Translations under genes and position numbers: made by a program
Part shown: piece after piece, positions 1,075-53,935 of the stretch
Numbering within the stretch: position 1 is the first letter of the stretch
Layout: each line of letters begins with the position of its first letter
DNA from: Octopus sinensis
Lineage: Eukaryota
NCBI RefSeq assembly: GCF_006345805.1
Contig: NW_021832282.1
Coordinates: forward strand, 1-64,000
Direction of reading: 5' to 3'
Length of the DNA: 64,000 bases
The notes under the pieces: model-generated
What the model was told of the DNA's origin: nothing
The model's input: only the letters and a program-made list of their open reading frames with translations
Database searches by the model: none

Positions 1075-3400
1075 ACACACACACACATATATATATATGT
1101 ATATACACACAGACATTTACGTGTAAGTATGTGTATATCTGTCTATATATACATACATATATATGTATATACACACATACATTTACGTATAAGTATGTGC
1201 ATATCCGTCTATATATACATACATATATATATATGTATATACACACAGACATTTATGTATAAATACGTGTATATCCGTCTATATATACATACATATATAT
1301 AGATGTATATACACACAGACATTTATGTATAAGTATGTGTATATCCGTCTATATATACATACATATATATATGTATATACACACAGACATTTATGTATAA
1401 ATATGTGTATATCCGTCTATATATACATACATATATATATAATATTATGTATATACAGAGACATTTATGTATAAATATGTGTATATCCGTCTATATATAC
1501 ATACATATAATATGTATATACACACAGACATTTATGTATGAATATGCGTATATTCCGTACTATATATACATATATATATGTATATACACAGATATTTACG
1601 TATAAATATGTGTATATCCGTATATATATACATACATATATATATATGTATATACACAGACATTTATGTATAAATATGTGTATATCCGTCTATATATACA
1701 TACATATATATATGTATATACACAGATATTTACGTATAAATATGTGTATATCCGTCCTATATAATACATATATATATTTGTATATACACACACATTTATA
1801 TTGTATAAATAATGTATATCTGTCTATATATACAATTAATATAGATGTATATACACAGACATTTACGTATAAAATGTGTATATCCGTGTCTATATAACAT
1901 ACATATATATATATATTTATATACACACAGACATTTATGTATAAATATATGTATATCCGTCTATATATACATACATATATATAGATGTATACACACAGAC
2001 ATTTATGTATAAATATGTGTATATCCGTCTATATATACATACATATATATATGTATATACACAGACATTTATGTATAAATATGTGTATATCCGTCTATAT
2101 ATACATACATATATATATGTATATACACACAGACATTTATGTATGAATATGCGTATATCCGTCTATATATACATATATATATATGTATATACACACAGAC
2201 ATTTATGTATAAATATATGTATATCCGTCTATATATACATACATATATATAGATGTATACACACAGACATTTATGTATAAATATGTGTATATCCGTCTAT
2301 ATATACATACATATATATATGTATATACACAGATATTTACGTATAAATATGTGTATATCCGTCTATATATACATACACATATATATATATGTATATACAC
2401 ACAGACATTTATGTATAAATATATGTATATCCGTCTATATATACATACATATATATATGTATATACACAGATATTTACGTATAAATATGTGTATATCCGT
2501 CTATATATACATACATATATATATGTATATACACACAGACATTTATGTATAAATATATGTATATCCGTCTATATATACATATATATATAGATGTATATAC
2601 ACAGACATTTACGTATAAATATATGTATATCCGTCTATATATACATACATATATATATATATGTATATACACACAGACATTTATGTATAAATATATGTAT
2701 ATCCGTCTATATATACATACATATATATATGTATATACACAGATATTTACGTATAAATATGTGTATATCCGTCTATATATACATACATATATATATATGT
2801 ATATACACACAGACATTTATGTATAAATATATGTATATCCGTCTATATATACATACATATATATAGATGTATACACACAGACATTTATGTATAAATATGT
2901 GTATATCCGTCTATATATACATACATATATATATATGTATATACACAGATATTTACGTATATGTATGTGTATATCCGTCTATATATACACACAGACATTT
3001 ATGTATAAATATGTGTATATCCGTCTATATATACATACATATATATATGTATATACACAGATATTTACGTATATGTATGTGTATATCCGTCTATATATAC
3101 ACACAGACATTTATGTATAAATATGTGTATATCCGTCTATATATACATACATATATATATGTATATACACAGATATTTACGTATATGTATGTGTATATCC
3201 GTCTATATATACACACAGACATTTATGTATAAATATGTGTATATCCGTCTATATATACATACATATATATATGTATATACACAGATATTTACGTATATGT
3301 ATGTGTATATCCGTCTATATATACACACAGACATTTATGTATAAATATGTGTATATCCGTCTATATATACATACATATATATAGATGTATACACACACAC
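1075..3400. repeat. Compound minisatellite, unit about 60-70 bp
   Basis: Recurring ACACAGACATTTATGTATAAATATGTGTATATCCGTCTATATATAC. Confidence 0.9.
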
Positions 3401-6204: not shown

Positions 6205-6861
6205 TCATAAAACAGCACAGCTCCTTCCATGACTTTCGGAAACATTTTTTCACACTAAGAGATGCTGAAGTATGGAAGAAACTGCTGGCATCAGTTGTTA
6301 GTTGTCGGAGCACTGCATCCTTCAAAACTTCCATGCTTCCTGAGATTCGCCAACACTACACCTGATTTTCTCCCCTCCATACACACACAAGCATGTATCT
6401 GACTCATACACTGTTCGCTTTCCAGACATTTGTACATTACTGCATATACTTTATACACACTTTTTGACAAGTTGTGGTGCACCTGAGCACTGTATACAAT
6501 AATTTCATTATTATTATTATTTAAAAACTCCACCTGTCTAACACCCATGGACATATTTACAAAGTCAGAAAACCGCACAGCTCCTATGACTTTCGGAAAC
6601 ATTTTTTCACGCTAAGAGTTGCTGAAGCATGGAACAAACTGCCGGCATCAGTTGTTAGTTGTCGGAGCACTGCATCCATCAAAACTTCTATGCTTCCTGA
6701 GATTCGCCAACACTACACCTGATCTTTCTCCCCTCCATACACAGACAAGCATGTATCTGACTCATACACTGTTCGCTTCCCAGACATTTGTACATTACTG
6801 CATATACTTTATACACACTTTTGAGAAGTTGTGGTGCATCTGAGCACTGTATACAATAATT

Positions 6862-6900
<39 letters not shown>

Positions 6901-8159: not shown

Positions 8160-8787
8160 TTTATAATAATGAAATTATCGAATACAGTGCTCAGGTGCCC
8201 CCACAACTTGTCAAAAGTGCGTATAAAGCATTTGCAGTAATGTACAAATGTCTGGGAAGTGAACAGTGTATGAGTCAGATACATGCTTGTGTGTGTATGG
8301 AGGGGAGGAAATCAGGTGTAGTGTTGGCGAATCTCAGAAAGCATGGAAGTTTTGAAGGATGCAGTGCTCCGACAACTAACAAATGATGCCAGCAGTTTGT
8401 TCCATGCTTCAGCAACTCTCAGTGTGAAAAAATGTTTCCGAAAGTCATGGGAGCTGTGCTGTTTTCTGACTTTGTAAATATGTCCACGGGTGTTAGACAG
8501 GTGGAGTTTTTGAATAATAATAATAATGAAATTATTGTATACAGTGCTCAGGTGCACCACAACTTGTCAAAAAGTGTGTATAAAGTATATGCAGTAATGT
8601 ACAAATGTCTGGAAAGCGAACAGTGTATGAGTCAGATACATGCTTGCGTGTGTATGGAGGGGAGAAAATCAGGTGTAGTGTTGGCGAATCTCAGGAAGAA
8701 TGGAAGTTTTGAAGGATGCAGTGCTCCGACAACAAACAACTGATGTCGGCAGTTTGTTCCATGCTTCAGCAACTCTCAGCGTGAATT
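8160..8787 (-). mobile_element. Inverted copy of the same CR1 3'-end dimer
   Basis: Same internal junction ATTATTATT(T/C)AAAAACTCCACC as at about 6522. Confidence 0.8.
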
Positions 8788-8854
8788 GTGTGTTTCAAAT
8801 AATGAAATAAACATCATTTCCCTGAAACTTTAATATTTTCACAAAGCTAAATGT

Positions 8855-8875
8855 TTTCTTTATATTTCATTACAG
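8855..8875 (+). promoter_or_regulatory. Splice acceptor of the propeller-gene exon
   Basis: Polypyrimidine tract plus CAG, 7 nt before the ATG. Confidence 0.7.
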
Positions 8876-8882
8876 ATTCACT

Positions 8883-11018
8883 ATGGATGTCCAAGAAGAA
8901 AATACTTTAAGAAAACTTATCTCTCAGAAAAGAGCTTTATGGGACTCAGCAATGAAAAGGTATGAAGATGGAGTTGACCATCAAAAGTGTAGATATGAGA
9001 GAGGTGGCTGTTCCCGGAGAGAATGGTCAGAGAAACGAGCTTCATCTTGGTCAACAACAAAACAAAAAAGGCATAAAGGAGTCTGTGAAAAGAGGGAAAT
9101 GATGGGAAAAGGAAATATTTTGGACAAACACATATTGTATACAAGATCTAATGCATATGAGGACAAAATGAATTTGTTGATAAATTCTCGGGAAGAAATA
9201 TGTACTTTTTTAAAAACTATAGGAACGGATGAAGATAATTTTCTAAAAGGTTTTACACACAAAATAGAAATTTTGATGAAAAACATTGAAAAAAATGATT
9301 ATGATCAAGATTTTATTATTTTTGAAAAACTAGAATTCTTCCTGGAACATTATTTACAGAGAAATATTTTCCAAAATAAACACAAAACCATTGAGCCACC
9401 AAATGTAACCACAAAATTTCGGCCTCTTCAACCAGTTGTGACCAAAGTAGCTGAGATTGAGGAACCTGTAGAAGGATTTGTCAAAAGCACAATACTATCC
9501 GATATTATTGTCACACATAAGGGAGTGGTCACCTTTTCCCGCCATTGTATGACAGTTTGTTTTATGACAAGAGACGGTGGCAGAAATGAGATTTGTTGTC
9601 CATCTTCTGTCACCAGTTTCACCAGAACCGGTGAAGACATGGTTCTGGCAACCCTCCCTTTCCAAAGAATGATTCTTTTAATCAGCCCCACATGTTTCAA
9701 GATTAAAAGGATTCAGTTGGGGTTGCATTTGGTTGCTTACTTAGAACATTCTACACTGATAGGTGTAGAAATGTTTGGTAAGACAGTTTACCAAATTGAT
9801 TGGGAGGATAATAGAATTCGATATGAATTCATTACTAAAGAAAAACCTACAGATATTGCTGTAGGGGTCCAGAATATACTTTTAGTTACATTTTCTACTT
9901 CTAACAGAGTAATCTGTTACAATTTGGATGGCCAACAGTTATGGGAGGTAGAGACCCATTCTCTGCACCTCCCAAGTAAAATCTCCCTGTACCAAAATTA
10001 TTTCTATGTCCTCCAGGGACAAATTATTTATAAGATTTCGGCTAAAGGTGGTGTAATAACGAGGGACATTGGCAGGAAATGCCACTCTATTTCTGTTGGT
10101 AAAGATACCATTTTGGTAACAGATTATTGCGGCAAAGCACATGCCATTGAAACAAATGAATACTTTTGGCCCAAACTGTCATACAACCACCAGGTACATA
10201 CTCTCAGTTTGAAAGACTATATTGATATTGAGGATTGCTGCAACATAACAAATTTTCTACCTATGTCTACATCTTCTATATTAGTAATTTACAAAAACAA
10301 GAAAGCTAAATTATTCACTGATAACGGGGAAATAATTAGCCAAAATAATTTAGTTTTCCTTGAGCTTCCTTCTTTCTGTTGTAGAATAAACGCAAACAGA
10401 TTCCTGGTATTTTATCGTGAAATGAAAGGGTTTCAGTATATCACCTGTCCTGAACTAAGAAAAGGCCCTTTAGTAAAGGTCCAAACAGATTATATGAAAA
10501 TATGTCTTATTGTATCAAATAAGTGTTTAGCTGTGACCACCACTGAAAACAAAATCGAGGCCCATATCATATTGGTCGAGGAAGATAAAGTTGACATTAT
10601 AGAAAGAATTTCTCTGGAACATTATAATGTCAGCATTGCTGCAACTCCAATTAATTTCGTGATCGTAGATGGAAACGAAAATAAAATGGTATTTTATTCC
10701 ACATGTGGTAAAGAACTTTTTCAAAAATACCTTCCATTCAATGGCCAACACCATCAAATCTACTCTGATAATATTTATATTTATGTCCTCTTCAAGAAAC
10801 ACTCTATTCTGGTATGTTATGATATATACGGAGAAATTAGATGGCAATGGAGACTACCTTTGCCTGTTCACCCTCACCTTGCTATTTTCCAAAGAACTTT
10901 TTATGTCCTGGACACTCAACTCAACAGGTTTCTTCTTTACAAGTATCAGGATGGGTCTTCTGGCTGTTGTTTGCACACAAATAATCCTTATATAAAAAAT
11001 CTAGATATACGAGCTTGA
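8883..11018 (+). CDS. 711-aa protein: predicted helical/coiled-coil N-terminus plus two tandem NHL-like beta-propeller regions (TRIM-NHL-like, no RING/B-box in this exon)
   Basis: Uninterrupted 2.1-kb non-repetitive ORF in AT-rich DNA, preceded by acceptor ttttctttatatttcattacag (AG 8874-8875). Blade-like motifs KPTDIAVGVQNILLVTFSTSNRVICYNLDG and ITNFLPMSTSSILVIYKNKKAKLFTDNG. Fold assignment by motif resemblance only. Confidence 0.8.
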   Translation: MDVQEENTLRKLISQKRALWDSAMKRYEDGVDHQKCRYERGGCSRREWSEKRASSWSTTKQKRHKGVCEKREMMGKGNILDKHILYTRSNAYEDKMNLLINSREEICTFLKTIGTDEDNFLKGFTHKIEILMKNIEKNDYDQDFIIFEKLEFFLEHYLQRNIFQNKHKTIEPPNVTTKFRPLQPVVTKVAEIEEPVEGFVKSTILSDIIVTHKGVVTFSRHCMTVCFMTRDGGRNEICCPSSVTSFTRTGEDMVLATLPFQRMILLISPTCFKIKRIQLGLHLVAYLEHSTLIGVEMFGKTVYQIDWEDNRIRYEFITKEKPTDIAVGVQNILLVTFSTSNRVICYNLDGQQLWEVETHSLHLPSKISLYQNYFYVLQGQIIYKISAKGGVITRDIGRKCHSISVGKDTILVTDYCGKAHAIETNEYFWPKLSYNHQVHTLSLKDYIDIEDCCNITNFLPMSTSSILVIYKNKKAKLFTDNGEIISQNNLVFLELPSFCCRINANRFLVFYREMKGFQYITCPELRKGPLVKVQTDYMKICLIVSNKCLAVTTTENKIEAHIILVEEDKVDIIERISLEHYNVSIAATPINFVIVDGNENKMVFYSTCGKELFQKYLPFNGQHHQIYSDNIYIYVLFKKHSILVCYDIYGEIRWQWRLPLPVHPHLAIFQRTFYVLDTQLNRFLLYKYQDGSSGCCLHTNNPYIKNLDIRA

Positions 11019-11172
11019 CAAAGTATCATTGGTGAAATATGTAATCTGGTGGTGTCCGACATCAACCATGATTGCTTGTTATAGAGAAATGATGGTCTTC
11101 AACAGGGATCTCTGTTGTTTAAAATCCATCAGAACTGAGAAATACTACAACACAATTTATAAATACAACGGC

Positions 11173-11477
11173 TGTGGAGGCACATGGCCTAGTGGTTAGA
11201 GCAGCAAACTCGCGGTCGAGAGATCGCGGGTTCGAATCTCAGACCGGGCGATGTGTGTGTTTATGAGCGAAACACCTAAGCTCCACGCGGCTCCAGCAGA
11301 AGGTAATGACGAACTTCTGCTGACTCTTTCGCCACAACTTTCTCTCACTCTTTCCTTCTGCATCTTGCAGCTCACCTGTGAGGGACAGGCGTCCCATCCA
11401 GGTGGAAAACCTATACGCCAAGAAACCGGAAACCGGCCCTTATGAGCCAGGCATGGCTCAAGAAGGAACAAACAACG
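11173..11477 (+). mobile_element. tRNA-derived SINE family C
   Basis: Head GGAGGCACATGGCCTAGTGG, box B GGTTCGAATCTC; 12-bp TSD aaatacaacggc (11161, 11478). Confidence 0.9.
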
Positions 11478-11792
11478 AAATACAACGGCAATCAACTCGT
11501 GTGTGGTGGTCATTATATTAGAGACATAACTCAAGAAGAGAGAGACGAGAAATACTAAAGAATATGGAACAACAAGAAGGATTACTACATTTGCAAAGAC
11601 CCTGACATCTTTGACTCTTATTTTGTGGATGTGATTGATATCAAAGGTAGGAAATGTAAAGATGAAGTACGTCACGGGGAGACGGGGAGGGAGAGGGAAT
11701 GTTGGAAGATGCAGGTGTGGATGATGTGGGAGTCACATCTTTTGGTGATGTTGTTGTTGTGAGGAGGGAGAAGAAGAAGGAGTAGAAATCTG

Positions 11793-12219
11793 GGATCTTT
11801 TCGGTTTGAACGGCAGTTTTTTAAAATAATTTCCACGTAACTAAACACTTTTAAACTTCGTATACTGGTAGAATGTGTTTATAAAACATCTTTTTCTCTT
11901 GGCTTTATTGAGAAAATTCTGTAGTTTGTAAGATATTTGTTGTTTTCTTCCTTCAATTTCTGCAATTTCAACCAATCAATGACGTCTATCGAGGTGAGAA
12001 ACATTCTGTGCCGTATGAATATGTCCCTCGTTTAAGAAACAGATTAGGTTTATTTACATTTCTGAAGAAAAAAATATACCCTTCCCCCACCCCTAAGCCT
12101 AACTAACCCTAACCCTAAATCAGATTGAAATACAATAGATTGATACCAGGGTCATAATTATGAGTGACAATTTCATATGGCACCGCCAGAAAAAACTGCC
12201 ATTCAAACGGAAAAGATCC
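11793..12219 (+). mobile_element. MITE, about 29-bp TIR GGATCTTTTCGGTTTGAACGGCAGTTTTT, 8-bp TSD (Merlin-like)
   Basis: TSD gaaatctg at 11785-11792 and 12220-12227. GG termini plus an 8-bp TSD fit Merlin; hAT is not excluded. Confidence 0.8.
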
Positions 12220-12331
12220 GAAATCTGAATGGAGGATTGATTCCTATCTTGTGGAATGGTTCAGCGAAAAGTCGTTGGTGAGGAGGATAAGAACAGAAGG
12301 CAGACATTCTGGTCTGGTCTTTTATATTCCA

Positions 12332-12720
12332 AGAGTGGCTGTGTGGTAAGTAGCTTGAAAACCAACCACATGGTTCCGGGTTCAGTCCCACAGCGTGGCA
12401 TCTTGGGCAAGTGTCTTCTGCTATAGCCCCGGGCCGACCAATGCCTTGTGAGTGGATATGGTAGACGGAAACTGAAAGAGGCCTGTCGTATATATGTATA
12501 TATATATATATGTGTGTGTCTGTGTTTGTCCCTCTAGCATTGCTTGACAACCGAAGCTGGTGTGTTTACGTCCCCGTCACTTAGCGGTTCGGCAAAAAGA
12601 GACCGATAGAATAAGTACTGGGCTTACAAAGAATAAGTCCCGGGGTCAATTTGCTCGACTAAAGGCGGTGCTCCAGCATGGCCGCAGTCAAATGACTGAA
12701 ACTAGTAAAAGAGTAAAAGA
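12332..12720 (+). mobile_element. SINE A inserted in the decayed propeller domain
   Basis: Family A sequence between codons CCA and GAG-AGT. Confidence 0.9.
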
Positions 12721-13404
12721 GAGAGTCTAACTACAAATGGTGAATGTGTTTATATAACAGATTCAAGAAACGATATTTTCCAGGTACCTCGACATATTGA
12801 AGAGGAAACATCTGAAAATATTGAAGTGCTGACACTTGAATATAATCCAAAATATTTAGTCCTCAGGGGTCATGATAATGAAGTCATCCAAGTTCTCGGT
12901 TTTGAGGTTCCAGAAAATTCTGTCATGGTTTTTGGAATTATTCTTGGATGTCAACCTTTTGATTTCTTTCATTATGACAAATAAATATTTTCAGAAATAT
13001 TAAACTTGAATATTGTTATCATTATTATTATTATTGTTGTTGTTGTTGTTGTTGTAAAATAGGTTCACCCAGGAATTGAACCTGGATTGCATACATTGCA
13101 TTCTTCCCACTAACAGTTATTGTTGTAACATTCCTCAACACACTCTATGTGTGTATATTTATATATAGTATATGTACATGTGTTTATATATATATATATA
13201 AACACATGTGACTTTTATTTGCTTTTTAAGGCTACAGCCAGCCATTCAGTTGAGACTCACAGCACCATCAACAACCATGAAGAATGTTGTTATCGTGCAA
13301 TGCCTGTGCAGGAAGATGTTTTTTAAAGTGAGGAAAGGCTGTGCACTGAGTCAATCCCACTCACTAAGCAACAGCAGCCATAATCCGAAAAGAAGAACAA
13401 GTCA

Positions 13405-21918: not shown

Positions 21919-22006
<88 letters not shown>

Positions 22007-22668
22007 ACTATCTATCTGTCTGTCTGTCTGTCTGTTTGACTATCTATCTGTCTATCTATCTGTCTATTTGTCTATCTATCTGTCTGTCTATTTGTCTATC
22101 TATCTGTCTGTCTATCTGTCTATCTATCTATCTATCTGTCCGTCTGTCTGTCTGTCTGTTTGACTATCTATCTGTCTATTTGTCTATCTATCTGTCTGTC
22201 TATCTATCTATCTGTCCGTCTGTCTGTCTGTCTATCTGTCTGTCTGTTTGACTATCTATCTGTCTATTTGTCTATCTATCTGTCTGTCTATTTGTCTATC
22301 TCTGTCTGTCTATCTGTCTATCTATCTATCTATCTGTCCGTCTGTCTATCTGTCTGTCTGTCTGTTTGACTATCTATCTGTCTATTTGTCTATCTATCTG
22401 TCTGTCTATCTATCTATCTGTCCGTCTGTCTGTCTGTCTATCTGTCTGTCTGTTTGACTATCTATCTGTCTATTTGTCTATCTATCTGTCTGTCTATTTG
22501 TCTATCTATCTGTCTGTCTATCTGTCTCTCTATCTATCTATCTGTCCGTCTGTCTGTCTGTCTATCTGTCTGTCTGTCTGTTTGACTATCTATCTGTCTG
22601 TCTATTTGTCTATCTATCTGTCTGTCTATCTGTCTATCTATCTATCTGTCCGTCTGTCTGTCTGTCTA

Positions 22669-22699
<31 letters not shown>

Positions 22700-22712
22700 A
22701 TCTGTCTGTCTA

Positions 22713-22755
<43 letters not shown>

Positions 22756-22795
22756 GTCTATCTAGATAGATAGATAGACAGACAGATAGATTAGA
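21900..22795. repeat. (TCTA/TCTG)n compound microsatellite
   Basis: Recurring GTTTGACTATC landmarks. Confidence 0.95.
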
Positions 22796-30381: not shown

Positions 30382-33255
30382 CAATTCAATTTTTATTGGC
30401 TCAAAAAGCAAAAGCAAGGCCATGTAGGGGGACATGGAGTTATGTACAGGGAGGGTGGTCATACAAAGAGTTCAGGCCATTTCTGGTCAAGAAAGACTTT
30501 GAACCGAGCGGTCGTCAGCATCTTCACTATCTTGTCCGGCAGCTTATTCCACGAATCTGCAACCCAGACGGAGAAAGCCCCCTCTCCTTCAATTGAGATG
30601 AAATCGTCGCAGATAGAGCTTTTCGGAGTGACCCCGCAGCCTACGCTCTGGAGCAGGAGTGAAGAACAGCTCTTTCGAGAGGTTACACTTTCCGCTTATG
30701 ATGTTGTGAGGCCATGTAGGGGGACATGGAGTTATGTACAGGGAGGGTGTTCATGTAAAGAGTTCAGGCCACTTGTGGTCAAGAAAGACTTTGAACCGAG
30801 CGGTCGTCGGCATCTACACTAACTCGTCCGGCAGCTTATTCCACGGATCCGCAACCCAGACGGAGAAAGCCCCCTCTCCTTCAATTGAGATGAAATCGTC
30901 GCAGATAGAGCTTTTCGGAGTGACCCCGCAGCCTACGCTCTGGAGCAGGAGTGAAGAACAGCTCTTTCGAGAGGTTACACTTTCCGCTTATGATGTTGTG
31001 AGGCCATGTAGGGGGACATGGAGTTATGTACAGGGAGGGTGGTCATACAAAGATTTCAGGCCATTTGTGGTCAAGAAAGACTTTGAACCTAGCGGTCGTC
31101 GGCATCTACACTAACTCGTCCGGCAGCTTATTCCACGGATCCGCAACCCAGACGGAGAAAAGCCCCCTCTCCTTCAATTGAGATGAAATGAAATCGTCGC
31201 AGATAGAGCTTTTCGGAGTGACCCCGCAGCCTACGCTCTGGAGCAGGAGTGAAGAACAGCTCTTTCGAGAGGTTACACTTTCCGCTTATGATGTGTGAGG
31301 CCATGTAGGGGGACATGGAGTTATGTACAGGAGGGTGGTCATACAAAGAGTTCAGGCCATTTCTGGTCAAGAAAGACTTTGAACCGAGCGGTCGTCAGCA
31401 TCTACACTAACTCGTCCGGCAGCTTATTCCACGAATCTGCAACCCAGACGGAGAAAGCCCCCTCTCCTTCAATTGAGATGAAATCGTCGCAGATAGAGCT
31501 TTTCGGAGTGACCCCGCAGCCTACGCTCTGGAGCAGGAGTGAAGAACAGCTCTTTCGAGAGGTTACACTTTCCGCTTATGATGTTGTGAGGCCATGTAGG
31601 GGGACATGGAGTTATGTACAGGGAGGGTGGTCATACAAAGATTTCAGGCCATTTGTGGTCAAGAAAGACTTTGAACCTAGCGGTCGTCAGCATCTTCACT
31701 ATCTTGTCCGGCAGCTTATTCCACGAATCTGCAACCCAGACAGAGAAAGCCCCCTCTCCTTCAATTGAGATGAAATCATCGCAGATAGAGCTTTTCGGAG
31801 TGACCCCGCAGCCTACGCTCTGGAGCAGGAGTGAAGAACAGCTCTTTCGAGAGGTTACACTTTCCGCTTATGATGTTGTGAGGCCATGTAGGGGGACATG
31901 GAGTTATGTACAGGGAGGGTGGTCATACAAAGAGTTCAGGCCATTTCTGGTCAAGAAAGACTTTGAACCGAGCGGTCGTCAGCATCTTCACTATCTTGTC
32001 CGGCAGCTTATTCCACGAATCTGCAACCAGACGGCGAAAGCCCCCTCTCCTTCAATTGAGATGAAATCATCGCAGATAGAGCTTTTCGGAGTGACCCCGC
32101 AGCCTACGCTCTGGAGCAGGAGTGAAGAACAGCTTTTTCAAGAGGTTACACTTCCCGCTTATGATGTTGTGAGGCCATGTAGGGGGACATGGAGTTATGT
32201 ACAGGGAGGGTGGTCATACAAAGATTTCAGGCCATTTGTGGTCAAGAAAGACTTTGAACCTAGCGGTCGTCGGCATCTACACTAACTCGTCCGGCAGCTT
32301 ATTCCACGGATCCGCAACCCAGACGGAGAAAGCCCCCTCTCCTTCAATTGAGATGAAATCGTCGCAGATAGAGCTTTTCGGAGTGACCCCGCAGCCTACG
32401 CTCTGGAGCAGGAGTGAAGAACAGCTCTTTCGAGAGGTTACACTTTCCGCTTATGATGTTGTGAGGCCATGTAGGGGGACATGGAGTTATGTACAGGGAG
32501 GGTGGTCATACAAAGAGTTCAGGCCATTTCTGGTCAAGAAAGACTTTGAACCGAGCGGTCGTCAGCATCTACACTAACTCGTCCGGCAGCTTATTCCACG
32601 AATCTGCAACCCAGACGGAGAAAGCCCCCTCTCCTTCAATTGAGATGAAATCGTCGCAGATAGAGCTTTTCGGAGTGACCCCGCAGCCTACGCTCTGGAG
32701 CAGGAGTGAAGAACAGCTCTTTCGAGAGGTTACACTTTCCGCTTATGATGTTGTGAGGCCATGTAGGGGGACATGGAGTTATGTACAGGGAGGGTGGTCA
32801 TACAAAGATTTCAGGCCATTTGTGGTCAAGAAAGACTTTGAACCTAGCGGTCGTCAGCATCTTCACTATCTTGTCCGGCAGCTTATTCCACGAATCTGCA
32901 ACCCAGACGGAGAAAGCCCCCTCTCCTTCAATTGAGATGAAATCGTCGCAGATAGAGCTTTTCGGAGTGACCCCGCAGTCGACGCTCTGGAGCAGGAGTG
33001 AAGAACAGCTCTTTCGAGAGGTTACACTTTCCGCTTATGATGTTGTGAGGCCATGTAGGGGGACATGGAGTTATGTACAGGGAGGGTGGTCATACAAAGA
33101 GTTCAGGCCATTTCTGGTCAAGGGAGACTTTGAACCGAGCGGTCATTGGCATCTTCACTATCTCGTCCGGCAGCTTATTCCACGGATCCACAACCCAGAC
33201 GGAGAAAACCCCTCTCCTTCGATTGAGATGAAATCGTTGTAGATAGAACTTTATA
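30375..33255 (-). repeat. Tandem array of a 292-bp CR1 LINE 3'-end unit (9 full plus 1 partial)
   Basis: Unit starts near 30418, 30710, 31002, 31299, 31590, 31882, 32173, 32465, 32757, 33049. Minus strand encodes LRGHSEKL..RV..WNKLP..FKV.LD. Confidence 0.9.
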
Positions 33256-35084: not shown

Positions 35085-35950
35085 CACACAGAACGGATAT
35101 AAAAACAGATATCAGTACAGTGAAATGTTTCTTCTGAACTTGAAAAAATAGCAACATCTTCCTTCATTGCTGACTAGAATATCTTCTCTACAAGATCTGT
35201 TGGAGAAATTTACAATTGGAGAAGTTTATAATTTAGCTTGTTGCATATTCAGATTTTGAGAAAAAGATACTGTTCATGGAGGTGTAGTGGTGTAGATTCC
35301 GTTTTGTAAGGAAGGAATTGTAAAGATAAACAGAACAGCGATACCTGTGTATTTTTGGTGAAAGAAGAAGAATAATGGAAACCAGCGACAATATTCAAGA
35401 ATTGATTTTTCCGACAGAACGGATATAAAAACAGATATCAGTACAGTGAAAGGTTTCTTCTGAACTTGAAAAAATAGCGACATCTTCCTTGGAATTGTAA
35501 AGACAAACAGAACAGCGATACCTGTGTATTTTTGGTGAAAGAAGAAGAATAATGGAAACTAGCGACAATATTCAAGAATTGATTTTTCCGACAGAACAGA
35601 TATAAAAACAGATATCAGTACAGTGAAAGGTTTCTTCTGAACTTGAAAAAATAGCGACATCTTCCTTGGAATTGTAAAGACAAACAGAACAGCGATACCT
35701 GTGTATTTTTGGTGAAAGAAGAAGAATAATGGAAACTAGCGACAATATTCAAGAATTGATTTTTCCGACAGAACGGATATAAAAACAGATATCAGTACAG
35801 TGAAAGGTTTCTTCAGAACTTGAAAAAATAGCGACATCTTCCTTCTTTGCTGTCCGGAATATCTTCTCTACAAGATCTGTTGGAGAAATTTACAATTTAG
35901 CTTGTTGCATATTCAGATATACCTGTGTATTTTTGGTGAAAGAAGAAGGA
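35085..35950 (+). repeat. 177-bp tandem repeat containing copies of the ZNF start region
   Basis: ATG GAA AC(C/T) AGC GAC AAT ATT CAA at 35375, 35552, 35729. Confidence 0.9.
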
Positions 35951-35952
35951 TA

Positions 35953-37530
35953 ATGGAAGCTGGTGACAATATTCAAGAATTGATTTTTCCGGAAATCCTA
36001 ACTGAAGGGATAAAGAAATCTTTATACCCTTGCAGTGTCTGTGGGAAGTATTTCGCTCAGAAAGGTAACTTAACGACTCACATGCGAAGTCATACAGGCG
36101 AGAAACCATATCACTGTAATATCTGTGGTAAATCGTTTTCCGGAAGCAGTAACTTTGCTAAGCACCGGCGTATCCATACAGGGGAGAAGCCGTATCACTG
36201 TGACGTGTGCGGAAAATCGTTCACCGAGAAAGGGGTATTGATTAAGCACCAGCGTATTCATACGGGAGAGAAGCCGTATAAGTGTAACGTGTGCGGAAAA
36301 TCGTTCTCTCGGAATGGCGAGGTAACTGTTCATCAGCGTATTCATACTGGAGAGAAACCTTATCATTGCGAAGTTTGCAGTAAATCGTTTGCGAGAAACG
36401 GCGAAGTGATTATACACCGGCGTATCCATACGTTGGAGAAGCCATACAAATGCCACGTCTGCGGAAAGGCTTTCTCTGAAACTGGGCATTTAACTACACA
36501 CATCCGCGTCCATACTGGAGAGAAACCATATCACTGTGACATCTGTGGTAAACGCTTCTCGCACGGAAATACCTTAGCGATACACAGGCGCATTCATTCA
36601 GGTGAGAAGCCGTATAACTGTAAAGTCTGCGGTAAATCGTTCTATGAAAATGGAATTTTAAGCAAGCACAAGTGTGTCCATGCGGGAGAGAAGTCCTTTC
36701 AGTGCGATATTTGCGGGAAATCCTTTGCTGCGAATGGGGTTTTGAAGAAACACCAGCATGTTCATACCGGGGAGAAACCCTATCATTGCGATATTTGTGG
36801 TAAAGCTTTCTCTTTGAGCCATCATTTGATCAAACACAGACACATTCATACAGGTGAGAGACCGTATCATTGTGATACCTGTGGGAAATCGTTTTCTGGA
36901 AATAGCGACTTGACCAGGCATAAGCGTATTCATACAGGCGAGAGGCCGTATCAGTGTGAAATCTGTGATAAATCTTTCTCCGAAAGCGGCCACTTGACCA
37001 TCCACATACGCATTCATACAGGTGAGAGGCCGTATCATTGTGACGTCTGTGGGAAATCGTTCTCTGAGAATGGAGTCTTGACCAAACACAAACGTATTCA
37101 TACAGGCGAGAAGCCATACCACTGTGATTTCTGCGGGAAATCGTTCACGCAAAACGGTGTCTTAACAAAACACAAGCTAATTCATATCGAAGAGAAACCG
37201 TATCACTGTGGGTTCTGTGGCGAATCGTTCTCAGAAAGCAGCGAATTAACCAAACACAGGGAATCTCATTCTTCAGAGAAAAAGTTCCACTGTGACATCT
37301 GTGGTAAATCTTTCTTCACGGTCAGTCAGTTGTCCGTACACACCCGTATTCATACAGGAGAGAAGCCATTTCGCTGTGATATCTGTGGCAAAGCATTTTC
37401 GAAAAACGGCGTCTTGACCACTCACATGCGTATTCACACCTCAGAGAAACCCTACAGTTGTGACATCTGTGGAAAAGCCTTCTCTCAGAAGTCTAATCTA
37501 ACAAGACATGTTAATATTCACACAGCATAG
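35953..37530 (+). CDS. Poly-C2H2 zinc-finger protein, 18 fingers
   Basis: 18 consecutive C-x2-C-x12-H-x3-H units with TGEKPY-type linkers. ATG at 35953 (the track starts 51 nt earlier at a TTG); stop TAG 37528-37530. Confidence 0.95.
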   Translation: MEAGDNIQELIFPEILTEGIKKSLYPCSVCGKYFAQKGNLTTHMRSHTGEKPYHCNICGKSFSGSSNFAKHRRIHTGEKPYHCDVCGKSFTEKGVLIKHQRIHTGEKPYKCNVCGKSFSRNGEVTVHQRIHTGEKPYHCEVCSKSFARNGEVIIHRRIHTLEKPYKCHVCGKAFSETGHLTTHIRVHTGEKPYHCDICGKRFSHGNTLAIHRRIHSGEKPYNCKVCGKSFYENGILSKHKCVHAGEKSFQCDICGKSFAANGVLKKHQHVHTGEKPYHCDICGKAFSLSHHLIKHRHIHTGERPYHCDTCGKSFSGNSDLTRHKRIHTGERPYQCEICDKSFSESGHLTIHIRIHTGERPYHCDVCGKSFSENGVLTKHKRIHTGEKPYHCDFCGKSFTQNGVLTKHKLIHIEEKPYHCGFCGESFSESSELTKHRESHSSEKKFHCDICGKSFFTVSQLSVHTRIHTGEKPFRCDICGKAFSKNGVLTTHMRIHTSEKPYSCDICGKAFSQKSNLTRHVNIHTA

Positions 37531-49907: not shown

Positions 49908-52295
49908 TTAAAATGATGATGATGAGCGATATGGTGCCTCTCCTCCTTCAGTGTAGTTGTAAGTAGTTAAAGAATTTCCCTGAATGATCGATATATCATG
50001 GATATTGTTGTCATGGCCCTTCTCTCCTGCGTGAATACATTTGTGTTTAGCCAAGCGACCAGTCTCAGAGAAGGATTTACCACAGGTACCGCAATGATAT
50101 GGTTTCTCCCCTGTATGAATACGTTTGTGTTTAGTGAACTGGCTTCCATCAGAGAAAGATTTCCCGCAGACACCACAGTGGTATGGTCTCTCACCTGTAT
50201 GAATACGTTTGTGTATATTTAAGTCTCCACTCTGGGAGAAAGATTTACCACAGATATTACACTGATATGGCTTCTCTCCGGTATGAATACGGTTGTGTTT
50301 AGTTAGGTGTACCTTTTGACAGAATGATGCCCCACAGATATCGCAGTGATATGGCTTCTCTCCTGTATGAATGCGTCTGTGTTTCGTAAACTGACTTCGA
50401 TCGGAGAAAGATTTACCACAGATATCACAATGATATGGCTTCTCTCCCGTGTGAATACGTCTGTGTATTGTTAAGTCGCCGCTTTGCGAGAATGATTTAC
50501 CACAGATATCACACTGATACGGCTTCTCTCCCGTGTGAACACGTTTGTGTTTCGTTACATGTTCCTTCTGAGCGAACGACATACCACAGATATCACAGAA
50601 ATATGGCCTCTCTCCTGTATGAATACGCTTGTGTTTGGTAAACTGACTCCCATCAGAAAAATATTTCCCACAGATATCACAATGATATGGTTTCTCTCCT
50701 GTATGTGTACGTTTATGTACAGTTAAGTCACCACTTTGAGTAAATGATTTACCACAGATATCACACTGATACGGCTTCTCACCTGTATGAACGCGTTTGT
50801 GTTTAATCAGGTGTTCGTTCTGAGAGAATGATTTCCCACAGATGTTGCAATGATATGGCTTCTCACCTGTATGGATACGTCTGTGCTTGGTTAAGTGACT
50901 ATTTTCAGAGAAAGATTTACCACAGGTATCACACTGATATGATTTTTCTCTTGTATGAATACGTCTATGTTTAGTCAGGTCACTACTTCCAGAGAATGAT
51001 TTACCGCAGGTATCACAGCAAAATTGATTTTCTCCTGTATGAATACGCTTGTGTTTGGTAAACTGACTCCCATCAGAAAAATATTTCCCACAGATATCAC
51101 AATGATATGGTTTCTCTCCTGTATGTGTACGTTTATGTACAGTTAAGTCACCACTTTGAGTAAATGATTTACCACAGATATCACACTGATACGGCTTCTC
51201 ACCTGTATGAACGCGTTTGTGTTTAATCAGGTGTTCGTTCTGAGAGAATGATTTCCCACAGATGTTGCAATGATATGGCTTCTCACCTGTATGGATACGT
51301 CTGTGCTTGGTTAAGTGACTATTTTCAGAGAAAGATTTACCACAGGTATCACACTGATATGATTTTTCTCTTGTATGAATACGTCTATGTTTAGTCAGGT
51401 CACTACTTCCAGAGAATGATTTACCGCAGGTATCACAGCAAAATTGATTTTCTCCTGTATGAATACGTCTATGTTTAATTAGGTCACTACTTCCAGAGAA
51501 TGATTTACCGCAGGTATCACAGCAATACTGCTTCTCACCTGTATGAGTAAACATGTGAGTAGTGAGGTTACATTTTTGAGAGAATGATTTACCGCAGGTA
51601 TCACAGCAAAATTGATTTTCTCCTGTATGAATACGTCTATGTTTAGTTAGGTCACTACTTCCAGAGAATGATTTACCGCAGGTATCACAGCAATACTGCT
51701 TCTCACCTGTATGAGTAAACATGTGAGTAGTGAGGTTACATTTTTGAGAGAATGATTTACCGCAGGTATCACAGCAATACTGCTTCTCACCTGTATGAGT
51801 ATACATGTGAGTGGTGAGGTTATATTTTTGAGAGAATGATTTACCGCAGGTATCACAGCAATACTGCTTCTCACCTGTATGAGTAAACATGTGAGTGGTG
51901 AGGTTATATTTTTGAGAGAATGATTTACCGCAGGTATCACAGCAATACTGCTTCTCACCTGTATGAGTATACATGTGAGTGGTGAGGTTAGATTTTTGAG
52001 AGAATGATTTACCAGAGGTATCACAATTATATGGTTTCTCACCTGTATGAATACGTTTGTGTTCAATTAAATGGTCATTTTGTGATACTGACACACCACA
52101 GATGTCACAGTGATACGGTTTTTCTCCTGTGTGAGCACGTTTATGAGCTGTAAGGTTCCATTTCTGAGAAAATAATTTACCACACACATCGCAGTCATAT
52201 AATGTCTTTTCATTCTCTTCCTTTACAACCTGGAGACCAATTATTTCTGATTGCGTTTCCCATTCATCCTTGTCCTCACAAAATTCATTCTCCAT
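49908..52295 (-). CDS. Poly-C2H2 zinc-finger protein, 26 fingers (finger 3 degenerate, CDTS)
   Basis: 795-aa ORF: short acidic N-terminus ([17 protein letters not shown]) followed by a finger array with TGEKPY/TGEKQY linkers. Confidence 0.95.
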
Positions 52296-52337: not shown

Positions 52338-53935
52338 TATGGATCTTCTTGAGTAGTATGGGTTTTCTTTAGTATGGCTCTTCTTGAGTAGTATGGGTTT
52401 TCTTGAGTAATATGGGTCTTTTTGAGTAGTATGGGTCTTCTTGATTAATATGGGTCTTCTTGAGTAGTATGGGTTTTCTTGAGTAATATGGGTCTTTTTG
52501 AGTAGTATGGGTCTTCTTGAGTAATATGGGTTTTCTTGAGTAATATGGGTCTTTTTGAGTAGTATGGGTTTTCTTGAGTAATATGGGTCTTCTTGAGTAG
52601 TATGGGTCTTCTTGAGTAATATGGGTCTTCTTGAGTAGTATGGGTCTTCTTGAGTAATATGGGTCTTCTTGAGGAATATGGGTCTTTTTGAGTAGTATGG
52701 GTCTTCTTGAGTAATATGGGTCTTCTTGAGGAATATGGGTCTTTTTGAGTAATATGGGTCTTCTTGAGTAATATGGGTCTTCTTAAGTAATATGGGTCTT
52801 CTTGAGTAATATGGGTCTTCTTGAGTAGTATGGGTCTTTTTGAGTAGTATGGGTCTTCTTGAGTAATATGGGTCTTCTTGAGTAGTATGGGTCTTCTTGA
52901 GTAATATGGGTCTTTTTGAGTAGTATGGGTCTTCTTGAGTAATATGGGTCTTTTTGAGTAATATGGATCTTTTTGAGTAATATGGGTCTTTTTGAGTAAT
53001 ATGGGTCTTTTCGAGTAATATGGGTCTTTTTGAGTAATATGGGTCTTCTTGAGTAGTATAGGTTTTCTTGAGTAGTATGGGTCTTCTTGAGTAATATGGG
53101 TTTTCTTGAGTAATATGGGTCTTCTTGAGTAGTATAGGTTTTCTTGAGTAGTATGGGTCTTCTTGAGTAATATGGTTTTCTTGAGTAATATGGGTCTTTT
53201 TGAGTAGTATGGGTCTTCTTGATTAATATGGGTCTTCTTGAGTAGTATGGGTTTTCTTGAGTAATATGGGTCTTTTTGAGTAGTATGGGTCTTCTTGAGT
53301 AATGGGTCTTCTTGAGTAATATGGGTTTTCTTGAGTAATATGGGTCTTTTTGAGTAGTATGGGTTTTCTTGAGTATATGGGTCTTCTTGAGTAGTATGGG
53401 TCTTCTTGAGTAATATGGGTCTTCTTGAGTAATATGGGTCTTCTTGAGTAATATGGGTCTTCTTGAGTAATATGGGTCTTTTTGAGTAATATGGGTCTTC
53501 TTGAGTAATATGGGTCTCTTGAGTAATATGGGTCTTTTTGAGTAATATGGGTCTTCTTGAGTAATATGGGTCTTCTTAAGTAATATGGGTCTTCTTGAGT
53601 AGTATGGGTCTTTTTGAGTAGTATGGGTCTTCTTGAGTAATATGGGTCTTCTTGAGTAATATGGGTCTTTTTGAGTAGTATGGGTCTTCTTGAGTAATAT
53701 GGGTCTTTTTGAGTAATATGGATCTTTTTGAGTAATATGGGTCTTTTTGAGTAATATGGGTCTTTTTGAGTAATATGGGTCTTCTTGAGTAGTATAGGTT
53801 TTCTTGAGTAGTATGGGTCTTCTTGAGTAATATGGGTTTTCTTGAGTAATATGGGTCTTCTTGAGTAGTATAGGTTTTCTTGAGTAGTATGGGTCTTCTT
53901 GAGTAATATGGGTTTTCTTGAGTAATATGGGTCTT
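52338..53935. repeat. 20-bp minisatellite, about 80 copies
   Basis: TTCTTGAGTA(A/G)TATGGGTCT with few variants. Confidence 0.95.

What the first reader, a model, noticed from the sequence alone, without database searches (positions are those of the whole stretch)
8883..12984. Tandem NHL-like propeller gene that has lost a third propeller, still readable behind the stop
Seen: the 711-aa ORF ends NLDIRA-TGA, but the same frame continues QSIIGEICNLVV. After a frameshift it reads PTSTMIACYREMMVFNRDL..TIYKYNG. Removing a SINE (12-bp TSD), a MITE (8-bp TSD) and a second SINE joins KYNGNQLVCGG..CKDPDIFDSYFVDVIDIKG, then (second frameshift) DVGVTSFGDVVVV..WRIDSYLVEWFSEKSLVRRI..FYIP-ESLTTNGECVYITDSRNDIFQV..HYDK-TAA (12984). 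Established: P.sl.t.G.vyitD is an NHL-type blade motif, and molluscs have expanded TRIM/NHL-like families. Inference: the ancestor was a single-exon protein of about 985 aa with three propellers. Domains 1-2 stay fully open while domain 3 has three stops, two frameshifts and three insertions, which points to selection keeping a truncated two-propeller form. I do not recognise this architecture from any named gene.
Basis: partly seen in the sequence, partly recalled or inferred. Interest (0 to 1): 0.78.

Follow-up and report, generated by a model that had tools for sequence, protein, structure and literature searches.

The report
Truncated octopus multi-propeller gene with relic tail
This is a shortened copy of an octopus-only gene that normally encodes six beta-propeller modules in a row: the copy keeps two modules in an open reading frame, and a deletion, stops and jumping-gene insertions have wrecked what is left of the rest.

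Summary
The sequence observations hold. There is a 711-aa ORF (8883-11018). Homology continues past its TGA. Three interspersed repeats are absent from the related loci. A decayed coding relic runs to HYDK-TAA at 12984.

The reconstruction is wrong in one key respect. The window is Octopus sinensis. The gene belongs to an uncharacterised, octopod-only family whose full-length members have about 1,650-1,900 aa in one coding exon: a helical N-terminus plus six roughly 260-290-aa NHL-like beta-propeller modules. The "first frameshift" at 11082/83 is the junction of a deletion of about 2.46 kb. That deletion removed modules 3-5 and the start of module 6. The relic is therefore the last ~235 codons of module 6, not a third propeller, and the ancestor was not ~985 aa.

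The two-module ORF has no stop (6.1 expected, P=0.0015) and no indel. The 824 bp behind the stop carries ten length changes (P between 3e-5 and 6e-12). Selection has therefore kept the frame open, although amino-acid change on this branch is nearly neutral (omega about 0.84).

An O. bimaculoides relative was truncated independently 28 codons earlier.

This is a new variant of a known kind and of moderate interest.

The parts
8855..8882 (+). Conserved splice-acceptor-like element (…TTTCTTTATATTTCATTACAG, AG at 8874-75) 7 nt upstream of the ATG. It suggests that the coding sequence is one large last exon preceded by a 5'-UTR intron.
   Evidence: The roughly 50 nt before the ATG are nearly invariant in four loci, including the paralogue L004 that shares only 62% protein identity. 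That it is an acceptor is inferred, not shown.
8883..11018 (+). Open reading frame of 711 aa plus TGA. It has an N-terminal region (aa 1-185; three predicted helices at 88-166), propeller module 1 (aa ~186-445; 9438-10217) and propeller module 2 (aa ~446-711; 10218-11015).
   Evidence: ORF. (75-78% identity to Octopus proteins over the full length). (AF2: all-beta, 24 strands in module 1, pLDDT 60-84; module 2 lower). (Foldseek: tandem beta-propellers).
11016..11018 (+). Premature TGA. Relatives read CTC AAA GAA (…RLKEKEND…) here.
   Evidence: Alignment. The O. bimaculoides locus instead has its own TAG 28 codons upstream.
11019..11082 (+). Remnant of the module 2-3 linker and the first 11 codons of module 3 (QSIIGEICNLVVSDINHDCLL). 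It carries two in-frame deletions of 18 and 15 bp.
11082..11083 (+). Junction of a deletion of about 2.46 kb. It removed family positions ~743-1561: the rest of module 3, modules 4 and 5, and the start of module 6. There is a TA microhomology. The joint is out of frame (+1) and creates TAG at 11082-84 in the ORF frame.
   Evidence: window 11083 jumps from L002 8228 to 10686 and from L001 10213 to 12338. (junction sequences).
11083..11172 (+). Module 6 relic, piece 1 (REMMVFNRDLCCLKSIRTEKYYNTIYKYNG).
   Evidence: 93-94% DNA identity to L001 and L002.
11173..11477 (+). SINE-like interspersed repeat, inserted with a 12-bp target-site duplication (11161-72 and 11478-89).
   Evidence: Empty site in L001 and L002. 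6 copies in the window. ARAGORN and Rfam call no tRNA in it.
11490..11792 (+). Module 6 relic, piece 2 (NQLVCGG…KY*…DVIDIKG…DVGVTSFGDVVVV…). Lesions: TAA at 11556-58, a 3-bp insertion near 11588, a 1-bp deletion near 11703 and TAG at 11783-85.
11793..12219 (+). MITE with 30-bp terminal inverted repeats (GGATCTTTTCGGTTTGAACGGCAGTTTTTT) and an 8-bp target-site duplication GAAATCTG (11785-92 and 12220-27).
   Evidence: inverted repeats, flanks, 6 copies in the window. Absent from L001.
12228..12334 (+). Module 6 relic, piece 3 (WRIDSYLVEWFSEKSLVRRIRTEGR…FYIP).
12335..12724 (+). Second SINE-like interspersed repeat (35 copies or fragments in the window). A 4-bp deletion at the insertion site shifts the frame.
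12725..12984 (+). Module 6 relic, piece 4 (SLTTNGECVYITDSRNDIFQV…VMVFGIILGCQPFDFFHYDK-TAA). It is still open and ends at the family's canonical stop.
   Evidence: E=1e-25 to P0021. (the family C-terminus is …FAFFHYDK).
12980..12985 (+). AATAAA overlapping the ancestral stop codon. It is the only canonical poly(A) signal between the TGA and 12998, so 11019-12985 is probably the 3' UTR of the truncated gene.
   Evidence: motif scan. Its use as a poly(A) signal is inferred.

Best explanation
**What it is**
- The locus is a truncated member of an uncharacterised, octopod-restricted gene family.
- Intact members carry one coding exon of about 5-5.7 kb. It encodes a charged, helical N-terminal region of about 185 aa followed by six six-bladed, distantly NHL-like beta-propeller modules of about 260-290 aa each. 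The protein ends …FFHYDK.

**What happened to this Octopus sinensis copy**
- The frame now ends at a TGA just after module 2.
- Behind the stop lie 11 codons of module 3.
- An out-of-frame, microhomology-type deletion of about 2.46 kb then removed modules 3-5 and the first blade or so of module 6.
- The last ~235 codons of module 6 survive down to the ancestral stop and AATAAA. They carry two further stops, two more frameshifts and three transposable-element insertions.

**Shown**
- The anatomy.
- The six-module ancestor.
- The deletion.
- The empty insertion sites in the related loci.
- The neutral decay of the tail.
- The absence of any stop or indel in the 2.1-kb ORF.

**Inferred**
- The N-terminus plus two-propeller product is still made and is kept by selection for an open frame, under weak or diversifying amino-acid constraint.
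- The relic serves as 3' UTR.
- Because the coding region has no downstream intron, a premature stop does not trigger exon-junction-dependent mRNA decay. Shortened forms can therefore be expressed and tested by selection. This would explain why the family is full of copies with different module numbers.
- The protein most likely works as an intracellular multi-propeller binding scaffold; it has no signal peptide and a basic N-terminus. Its ligand is unknown.
For: **Family and architecture**
- only 31 representatives among 1.84 billion proteins, all from Octopus species or Argonauta hians apart from two weak NHL hits.
- full-length members of 1,625-1,925 aa.
- internal repeats with a period of about 260-300 aa.
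- the O. vulgaris locus L002 is open over 1177 + 622 codons, broken by a single frameshift.

**Deletion and inserts**
-.

**Relic identity**
- E=3e-51 to family positions 1552-1796.

**Fold**
- modules 1-2 are all-beta and match tandem propellers.
- module 6 of P0067 has pLDDT 75-94 and 24 strands, and matches WDR5, Fbw7 and G-beta propellers with TM-scores of 0.45-0.54.
- weak sequence links to NHL.

**Selection**
- pairwise dN/dS is 0.50-0.60 in the ORF against 0.88-1.03 in the relic.
- 151 substitutions on the window branch would give 6.1 stops; P(no stop)=0.0015.
- 10 length changes in the 824 bp behind the stop against 0 in the 2133-bp ORF. P=6e-12, or 3e-5 if only small indels are counted.
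- an independent two-module truncation in O. bimaculoides L001. It has its own TAG, modules 3-6 riddled with stops, and a branch omega of 0.48 (p=0.03).
Against: - On the window's own branch the ORF's amino-acid pattern is statistically neutral: 108 non-synonymous to 41 synonymous changes against 113:36 expected, omega 0.84.
- Its substitution density (0.071 per site) is close to that of the relic (0.079).
- There are no expression data.
- A 623-bp repeat insertion at 8163-8785 lies about 100 bp upstream of the ATG and could have affected the upstream region.
- The contig is an unplaced contig of its assembly. Single-base frameshifts, and conceivably the deletion, could be assembly errors.
- No annotated orthologue of about 98% identity was found in the sister species O. 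vulgaris, so the events cannot be dated.
- The AF2 models have low overall confidence (mean pLDDT 51-52).
Confidence: 0.7

Rival explanations
1. The whole locus is a dying pseudogene. The 711-codon frame is open only by chance or because function was lost recently. No truncated protein is selected.
For: Window-branch omega is 0.84, not different from 1. The ORF's substitution density roughly equals the relic's. Many family copies are fragments broken at many different positions. A repeat has inserted about 100 bp upstream of the ATG.
Against: P(no stop)=0.0015. P(no indel) is at most 3e-5. Lesions start immediately after the TGA, with two deletions within 64 bp. A parallel truncation in O. bimaculoides shows significant purifying selection.
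Confidence: 0.15
2. The locus is a recombinant. Unequal crossing-over or gene conversion in the tandem array joined the 5' part of a live full-length copy to the 3' part of an already dead copy. The contrast between intact and decayed parts would then need no selection on a truncated form.
For: The family sits in large tandem clusters on one small chromosome. Many members have internal module-to-module joins, so rearrangement is frequent.
Against: The ORF and the relic give the same relationships and proportional distances among the window, L001, L002 and L004. The boundary between intact and decayed sequence coincides with the stop codon. The junction shows a 2-bp microhomology, not a homologous exchange.
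Confidence: 0.1
3. A single-exon ancestor of about 985 aa with three propellers lost its third propeller in place through stops, two frameshifts and three insertions.
For: The readings themselves are correct and the inserts are real.
Against: Both related loci carry 2.1-2.5 kb of extra coding sequence between window positions 11082 and 11083. The relic aligns to family positions 1552-1796, not 706-950. Full-length members have six modules.
Confidence: 0.02

Closest known systems
TRIM-NHL proteins (TRIM2/3/32/71; Drosophila Thin, Brat) and the NHL repeat, Pfam PF01436
   Same: Blade motifs of the type G.vYvtD..N.I.vF. Modules of about 250-280 aa predicted as 24 strands, that is six blades. A helical region lies N-terminal to the propellers. 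The family profile's only outside hits are true NHL proteins, and its best PDB sequence hit is the NHL domain of Thin.
   Different: No RING or B-box. No NHL match reaches Pfam's threshold: 8.7 bits here, and 18.5 bits at best in the family, against a cut-off of 20. There are six propellers in tandem instead of one.
Tandem beta-propeller proteins (Utp21/WDR36, IFT-A subunits, LRP5/6 and LRP2 YWTD propellers, EML-type tandem propellers)
   Same: Best Foldseek matches of the 711-aa model (E=1e-17 to 1e-12). Consecutive propellers in one chain acting as binding platforms.
   Different: No sequence relationship. No WD40 or LDL-receptor class B repeats, and no EGF spacers. TM-scores are low (0.2-0.3) because the model is of low confidence. 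Six directly abutting propellers is unusual.
Uncharacterised octopod proteins of the same family (for example O. bimaculoides LOC106873529 with 1712 aa and LOC106870252 with 683 aa; O. vulgaris CAI97… 'hypothetical predicted protein'; Argonauta hians Ahia01_000013500 with 1913 aa)
   Same: Direct homologues: 75-78% identity over the whole ORF, the same N-terminus, the same module order and the same C-terminus in the relic.
   Different: This copy has only modules 1-2 in frame, a private 2.46-kb deletion and three private transposable-element insertions.

Membership tests
NHL repeat family (Pfam PF01436) / TRIM-NHL | NHL repeat matches above Pfam's gathering score (20 bits) | tested here: not met
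   Window protein 8.7 bits, E=2.5. Best family member P0032 18.5 bits.
NHL repeat family (Pfam PF01436) / TRIM-NHL | Six-bladed beta-propeller of about 250-280 aa | tested here: inconclusive
   AF2 gives 24 strands in module 1 (pLDDT 60-84) and in module 6 of P0067 (pLDDT 75-94). Foldseek matches propellers in general, with WD40 on top, not NHL specifically.
NHL repeat family (Pfam PF01436) / TRIM-NHL | Detectable sequence homology to bona fide NHL domains | tested here: inconclusive
   The family profile hits two true NHL proteins at E=5e-4 and 7e-4 in 1.84 billion sequences, and the NHL domain of Thin in the PDB at E=0.015.
NHL repeat family (Pfam PF01436) / TRIM-NHL | RING, B-box and coiled-coil N-terminal to the propeller (TRIM subfamily) | tested here: not met
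   No RING or B-box in the Pfam scans of this protein or of full-length members. Only three predicted helices, at residues 88-166.
WD40 repeat propellers | WD40 repeat matches in Pfam | tested here: not met
   No WD40 repeat family listed. The one WD40-type entry is a sub-threshold CFAP43 domain (12.8 bits against a cut-off of 26.9). The similarity is at fold level only.
Octopod six-propeller family (unnamed; LOC106873529-like) | Family N-terminal region followed by modules 1 and 2, collinear with full-length members | tested here: met
   74% identity over family positions 1-708. E=0 to 20 Octopus proteins.
Octopod six-propeller family (unnamed; LOC106873529-like) | Modules 3-6 and the canonical C-terminus …FFHYDK in the same frame | tested here: not met
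   Modules 3-5 are deleted. The tail of module 6 and HYDK-TAA are present only as an out-of-frame, interrupted relic.
Octopod six-propeller family (unnamed; LOC106873529-like) | Single uninterrupted coding exon | tested here: met
   The ORF is contiguous here and in L001, L002 and L004.

The most novel reading that the evidence does not exclude
The amplified, fast-evolving branch of this octopod-only six-propeller family may be a diversifying recognition system, with an immune-like or other arms-race role. In this reading, module number is tuned by intragenic deletions and premature stops. The intron-less coding exon makes these invisible to nonsense-mediated decay. Two-propeller forms would then have been selected convergently at least twice (this O. 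sinensis copy and O. bimaculoides LOC106870252), with the frame kept open while the amino-acid sequence turns over almost neutrally.
Probability: 0.2. Interest if true: 0.6.

Novelty: new variant of a known kind. Interest (0 to 1): 0.4.

Why it matters
- It documents an unnamed family restricted to octopods, and places one member within it. The family has six NHL-like propellers in tandem, dozens of copies clustered on one small chromosome, and a slowly evolving relative on a large chromosome.
- It shows how such a family changes module number: by microhomology-type deletions and stops inside a single giant exon.
- The locus gives a clean internal control. The 3' UTR relic serves as the neutral reference and the ORF as the test, which allows asking whether shortened propeller proteins are functional.
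- For annotators, many 'hypothetical proteins' of O. vulgaris and O. sinensis are fragments of one family, and gene models should be read with this six-module template.
- It does not open a long-standing question. A truncated gene with a pseudogenised tail is a common outcome of birth-and-death evolution.

Tried and rejected
- **tblastn on the raw downstream DNA.** Searching long paralogues against it gave only noise beyond 11081. The relic became significant only after the three inserts were removed and proteins containing module 6 were used.
- **Self-BLAST of the full-length protein.** It found no repeats. Windowed phmmer did.
- **Profile-profile comparison of the six modules.** It gave only weak, blade-level matches in shifted registers (best E=2e-5). 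The modules are old and divergent, not recent duplicates.
- **tRNA origin of the two SINE-like inserts.** ARAGORN and Rfam found no tRNA, so I call them SINE-like only.
- **P0006 (O. sinensis, 764 aa).** It looked like a third truncation at the module 2-3 boundary. Its locus is in fact an almost intact full-length copy with one frameshift and one stop, so I did not count it.
- **Literature.** Three searches found nothing on the family.
- **Transposon-encoded ORF.** I considered this for the family because it is multi-copy and single-exon. I rejected it because the copies sit in tandem clusters on one chromosome, and a conserved member lies elsewhere.


Full report
**1. The observation**

The window has an ATG-to-TGA reading frame at 8883..11018 (+) encoding 711 aa and ending NLDIRA. 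It is by far the longest non-repetitive ORF in its neighbourhood. The same frame reads on as QSIIGEICNLVVSDINHDCLL.

- A 305-bp SINE-like element at 11173-11477, flanked by the 12-bp duplication AAATACAACGGC.
- A 427-bp MITE at 11793-12219, with 30-bp terminal inverted repeats and the 8-bp duplication GAAATCTG.
- A 390-bp SINE-like element at 12335-12724.

Each has further copies in the window: 6, 6 and 35. Each is absent from the matching position of two related loci, so those loci show the empty sites.

**2. Where the window comes from, and the relatives**

The exact protein is encoded on Octopus sinensis contig VCDQ01005275.1, an unplaced contig of GCA_006345805.1.

A word-indexed search of 5.8 billion proteins found 20 relatives, all from O. 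vulgaris, O. sinensis and O. bimaculoides and all 'uncharacterized'. An exhaustive profile search of 1.84 billion cluster representatives found only 31 proteins. Of the ten hits whose source was looked up, eight are from Octopus species or Argonauta hians. The other two, the weakest (E=5e-4 and 7e-4), are genuine NHL-repeat proteins (Pfam NHL 43 and 105 bits).

No Pfam family reaches threshold on the window protein or on six other members. The sub-threshold hits are NHL, SGL, DUF5711 and DUF4934, which Pfam mostly describes as propeller families. The best PDB sequence match of the family profile is the NHL domain of Drosophila Thin/TRIM32 at E=0.015.

**3. The full-length template**

- Several relatives are much longer than 711 aa.
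- The O. vulgaris locus L002 is a single uninterrupted coding stretch. It has 1177 codons, one frameshift, then 622 more open codons, about 1,796 in all.
- Full-length proteins of 1,625-1,925 aa exist in O. bimaculoides (LOC106873529, LOC106882419), O. vulgaris and Argonauta hians.
- All end in …VFGIIPGRQSFAFF(H/Y)(Y/F)DK.
- Windowed self-comparison shows internal repeats with offsets of about 260-300 aa. This gives an N-terminal region of about 185 aa and six modules: roughly 186-445, 446-705, 706-950, 951-1240, 1241-1520 and 1521-1796.
- The modules are old and divergent from one another.
- AlphaFold2 on the 711-aa protein has low overall confidence (mean pLDDT 51.7). It gives three helices at 88-166 and an all-beta module 1 of 24 strands with pLDDT 60-84.
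- Foldseek returns tandem-propeller proteins for that model: IFT-A, Utp21 and LRP6, at E down to 2e-17.
- Module 6 of P0067 is modelled at pLDDT 75-94, again with 24 strands. It matches WDR5, Fbw7 and G-beta propellers with target-normalised TM-scores of 0.45-0.54.
- Twenty-four strands fit six four-stranded blades, as in NHL-type propellers. That reading is inferred from moderate-confidence models.

**4. What really lies behind the stop**

DNA comparison is decisive.
- Window 8786-11083 is collinear with L002 5904-8228 and with the O. bimaculoides locus L001 7904-10213, at about 86% identity.
- The next window base, 11083, continues at L002 10686 and at L001 12338.
- The window therefore lacks 2457 bp relative to L002, and 2124 bp relative to L001, which has gaps and deletions of its own.
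- The junction has a 2-bp TA microhomology, is out of frame, and creates TAG at 11082-84.
The homologous frame of module 3 (VVSDINHDCLL) runs straight on from the ORF frame up to it.
- After the junction, the sequence aligns to family positions 1552-1796 at E=3e-51, and to the intact C-terminus of P0021 at E=1e-21 and 1e-25.

The relic is thus the last ~235 codons of module 6, about five of its six blades. Its lesions in the family frame are:
- TAA at 11556-58.
- A 1-bp deletion near 11703.
- TAG at 11783-85.
- A 4-bp deletion at the third insertion site.
- The three inserts themselves.

Between the TGA and the junction there are also two in-frame deletions, of 18 and 15 bp. The final 53 codons are still open and end at the ancestral stop. 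That stop overlaps the only AATAAA in the region, at 12980-85.

**5. Is the two-module ORF maintained?**

Evidence that the frame is kept open:
- Pairwise dN/dS is 0.50 against O. bimaculoides and 0.60 against O. vulgaris for the ORF. For the relic it is 0.88-1.03.
- Polarising changes with the two other loci gives 151 substitutions on the window branch. Placing the same spectrum at random produces 6.1 stops on average, and no stop in only 0.15% of 20,000 trials.
- The 824 bp of ancestral sequence behind the stop carries ten length-changing events private to the window: four small indels, two medium deletions, the large deletion and three element insertions. The 2133-bp ORF carries none. The Poisson probability is 6e-12, or 3e-5 if only small indels are counted.
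- Lesions begin within a few bases of the TGA.

Evidence that the protein sequence itself is barely constrained:
- The window-branch amino-acid pattern is close to neutral: 108 non-synonymous to 41 synonymous changes against 113:36 expected, omega 0.84.
- The ORF's substitution density (0.071) is close to the relic's (0.079).

The evidence therefore shows selection for an open frame with weak or diversifying constraint on the sequence. It does not show a well-conserved protein.

**6. An independent parallel**

- The O. bimaculoides locus L001 (LOC106870252, 683 aa) ends at its own TAG 28 codons upstream of the window's TGA. The window has GGG at that position.
- L001 keeps modules 3-6 in place, but they are riddled with stops and frameshifts.
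- It shares no disabling lesion with the window's relic.
- Its ORF shows significant purifying selection on its own branch (omega 0.48, p=0.03).
- O. sinensis and O. vulgaris are sister species by established taxonomy. Yet the window is as far from L002 (JC distance 0.148) as from L001 (0.138). The window copy is therefore a paralogue of L002, and the truncations are independent events.
- Other gene models end near the module 1-2 boundary or carry module-to-module joins. Some of these may be artefacts of gene prediction across lesions.
- P0006, which looked like a third case, is a nearly intact full-length copy with one frameshift.

**7. Mechanism proposed**

Shown:
- A six-module ancestor.
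- A premature stop.
- A microhomology-type deletion.
- Three insertions.
- Neutral decay of the tail.
- A protected ORF.

Inferred:
- The gene still produces the N-terminal region plus two propellers.
- The relic is its roughly 1.97-kb 3' UTR, ending at the ancestral poly(A) signal.
- A conserved acceptor-like element 7 nt upstream of the ATG means the coding sequence is one terminal exon.
- By the established exon-junction rule for nonsense-mediated decay, premature stops in such a gene are not policed. This would let the family try out shorter forms.
- The product has no signal peptide and a basic N-terminus. It is most likely an intracellular propeller scaffold that binds unknown partners.

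**8. Rivals**

- A pseudogene open by chance or only recently dead. This fits the near-neutral omega but not the absence of stops and indels.
- A recombinant of a live 5' part and a dead 3' part. This is plausible in a tandem array. However, both parts give the same relationships among four loci, and the junction is not a homologous exchange.
- Assembly error, which cannot be excluded for single-base frameshifts on an unplaced contig.

**9. Novelty and verdict**

- The sequence observations were accurate. The evolutionary reconstruction needs correcting, from three modules to six and from a frameshift to a 2.46-kb deletion.
- The family is unnamed and restricted to octopods. I found no paper on it.
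- Its fold class is familiar, and a truncated copy with a decaying tail is an ordinary product of gene-family turnover.
- I rate it a new variant of a known kind, with interest 0.4.
- No step had to be referred.

Noticed in passing
window 8163-8785 and 6249-6871: A 623-bp repeat made of two ~265-bp units sits about 100 bp upstream of the ATG and is absent from L001 and L002. An inverted copy with 94.5% identity lies about 1.3 kb further upstream, so the two form a large inverted repeat across the region upstream of the gene.
   Followed up: partly
window 35902-37530 (+) and 49908-52295 (-): Two long open frames (542 and 795 aa) made almost entirely of C2H2 zinc fingers with HTGEKPY linkers. 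The propeller gene lies next to a zinc-finger cluster.
   Followed up: no
window 30417-33252: A 292-bp satellite, 9.7 copies at 95% identity and relatively GC-rich (0.43-0.47). It produces spurious ORFs of 150-220 aa.
   Followed up: no
window 52338-53935: A 19-bp minisatellite (TATGGGTCTTCTTGAGTAA, about 84 copies at 90% identity) with extreme strand asymmetry (GC skew +0.42, AT skew -0.33). It lies directly beside the zinc-finger ORF.
   Followed up: no
window 1081-3343 and 21919-22763: An AT-rich satellite of 66/134 bp (about 33 copies) and a TCTG microsatellite of about 212 copies.
   Followed up: no
P0039 / P0054 (O. vulgaris CAJ1099278.1, CAJ1099277.1): Gene models annotated as MIB2-like E3 ligase carry ankyrin repeats and a RING finger, followed by the first ~110 residues of propeller module 1 of this family. 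This could be a RING-plus-propeller chimera or a prediction artefact.
   Followed up: partly
P0032 / P0051 / P0052 (O. vulgaris, O. sinensis, O. bimaculoides; chromosomes of about 190-215 Mb): A distant six-module member (about 30% identity to the amplified copies) is at least 90% identical across the three Octopus species and lies on a different, large chromosome. It may be the slowly evolving founder of the family, in contrast with the fast-evolving cluster on the small chromosome.
   Followed up: partly
L002 9520-9531 and L004 about 9150-9190: The O. vulgaris and O. sinensis full-length copies are each broken by a single frameshift but otherwise open over more than 1,000 codons. These could be very recent inactivations or single-base assembly errors, and annotators split them into separate 'hypothetical proteins'.
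   Followed up: partly
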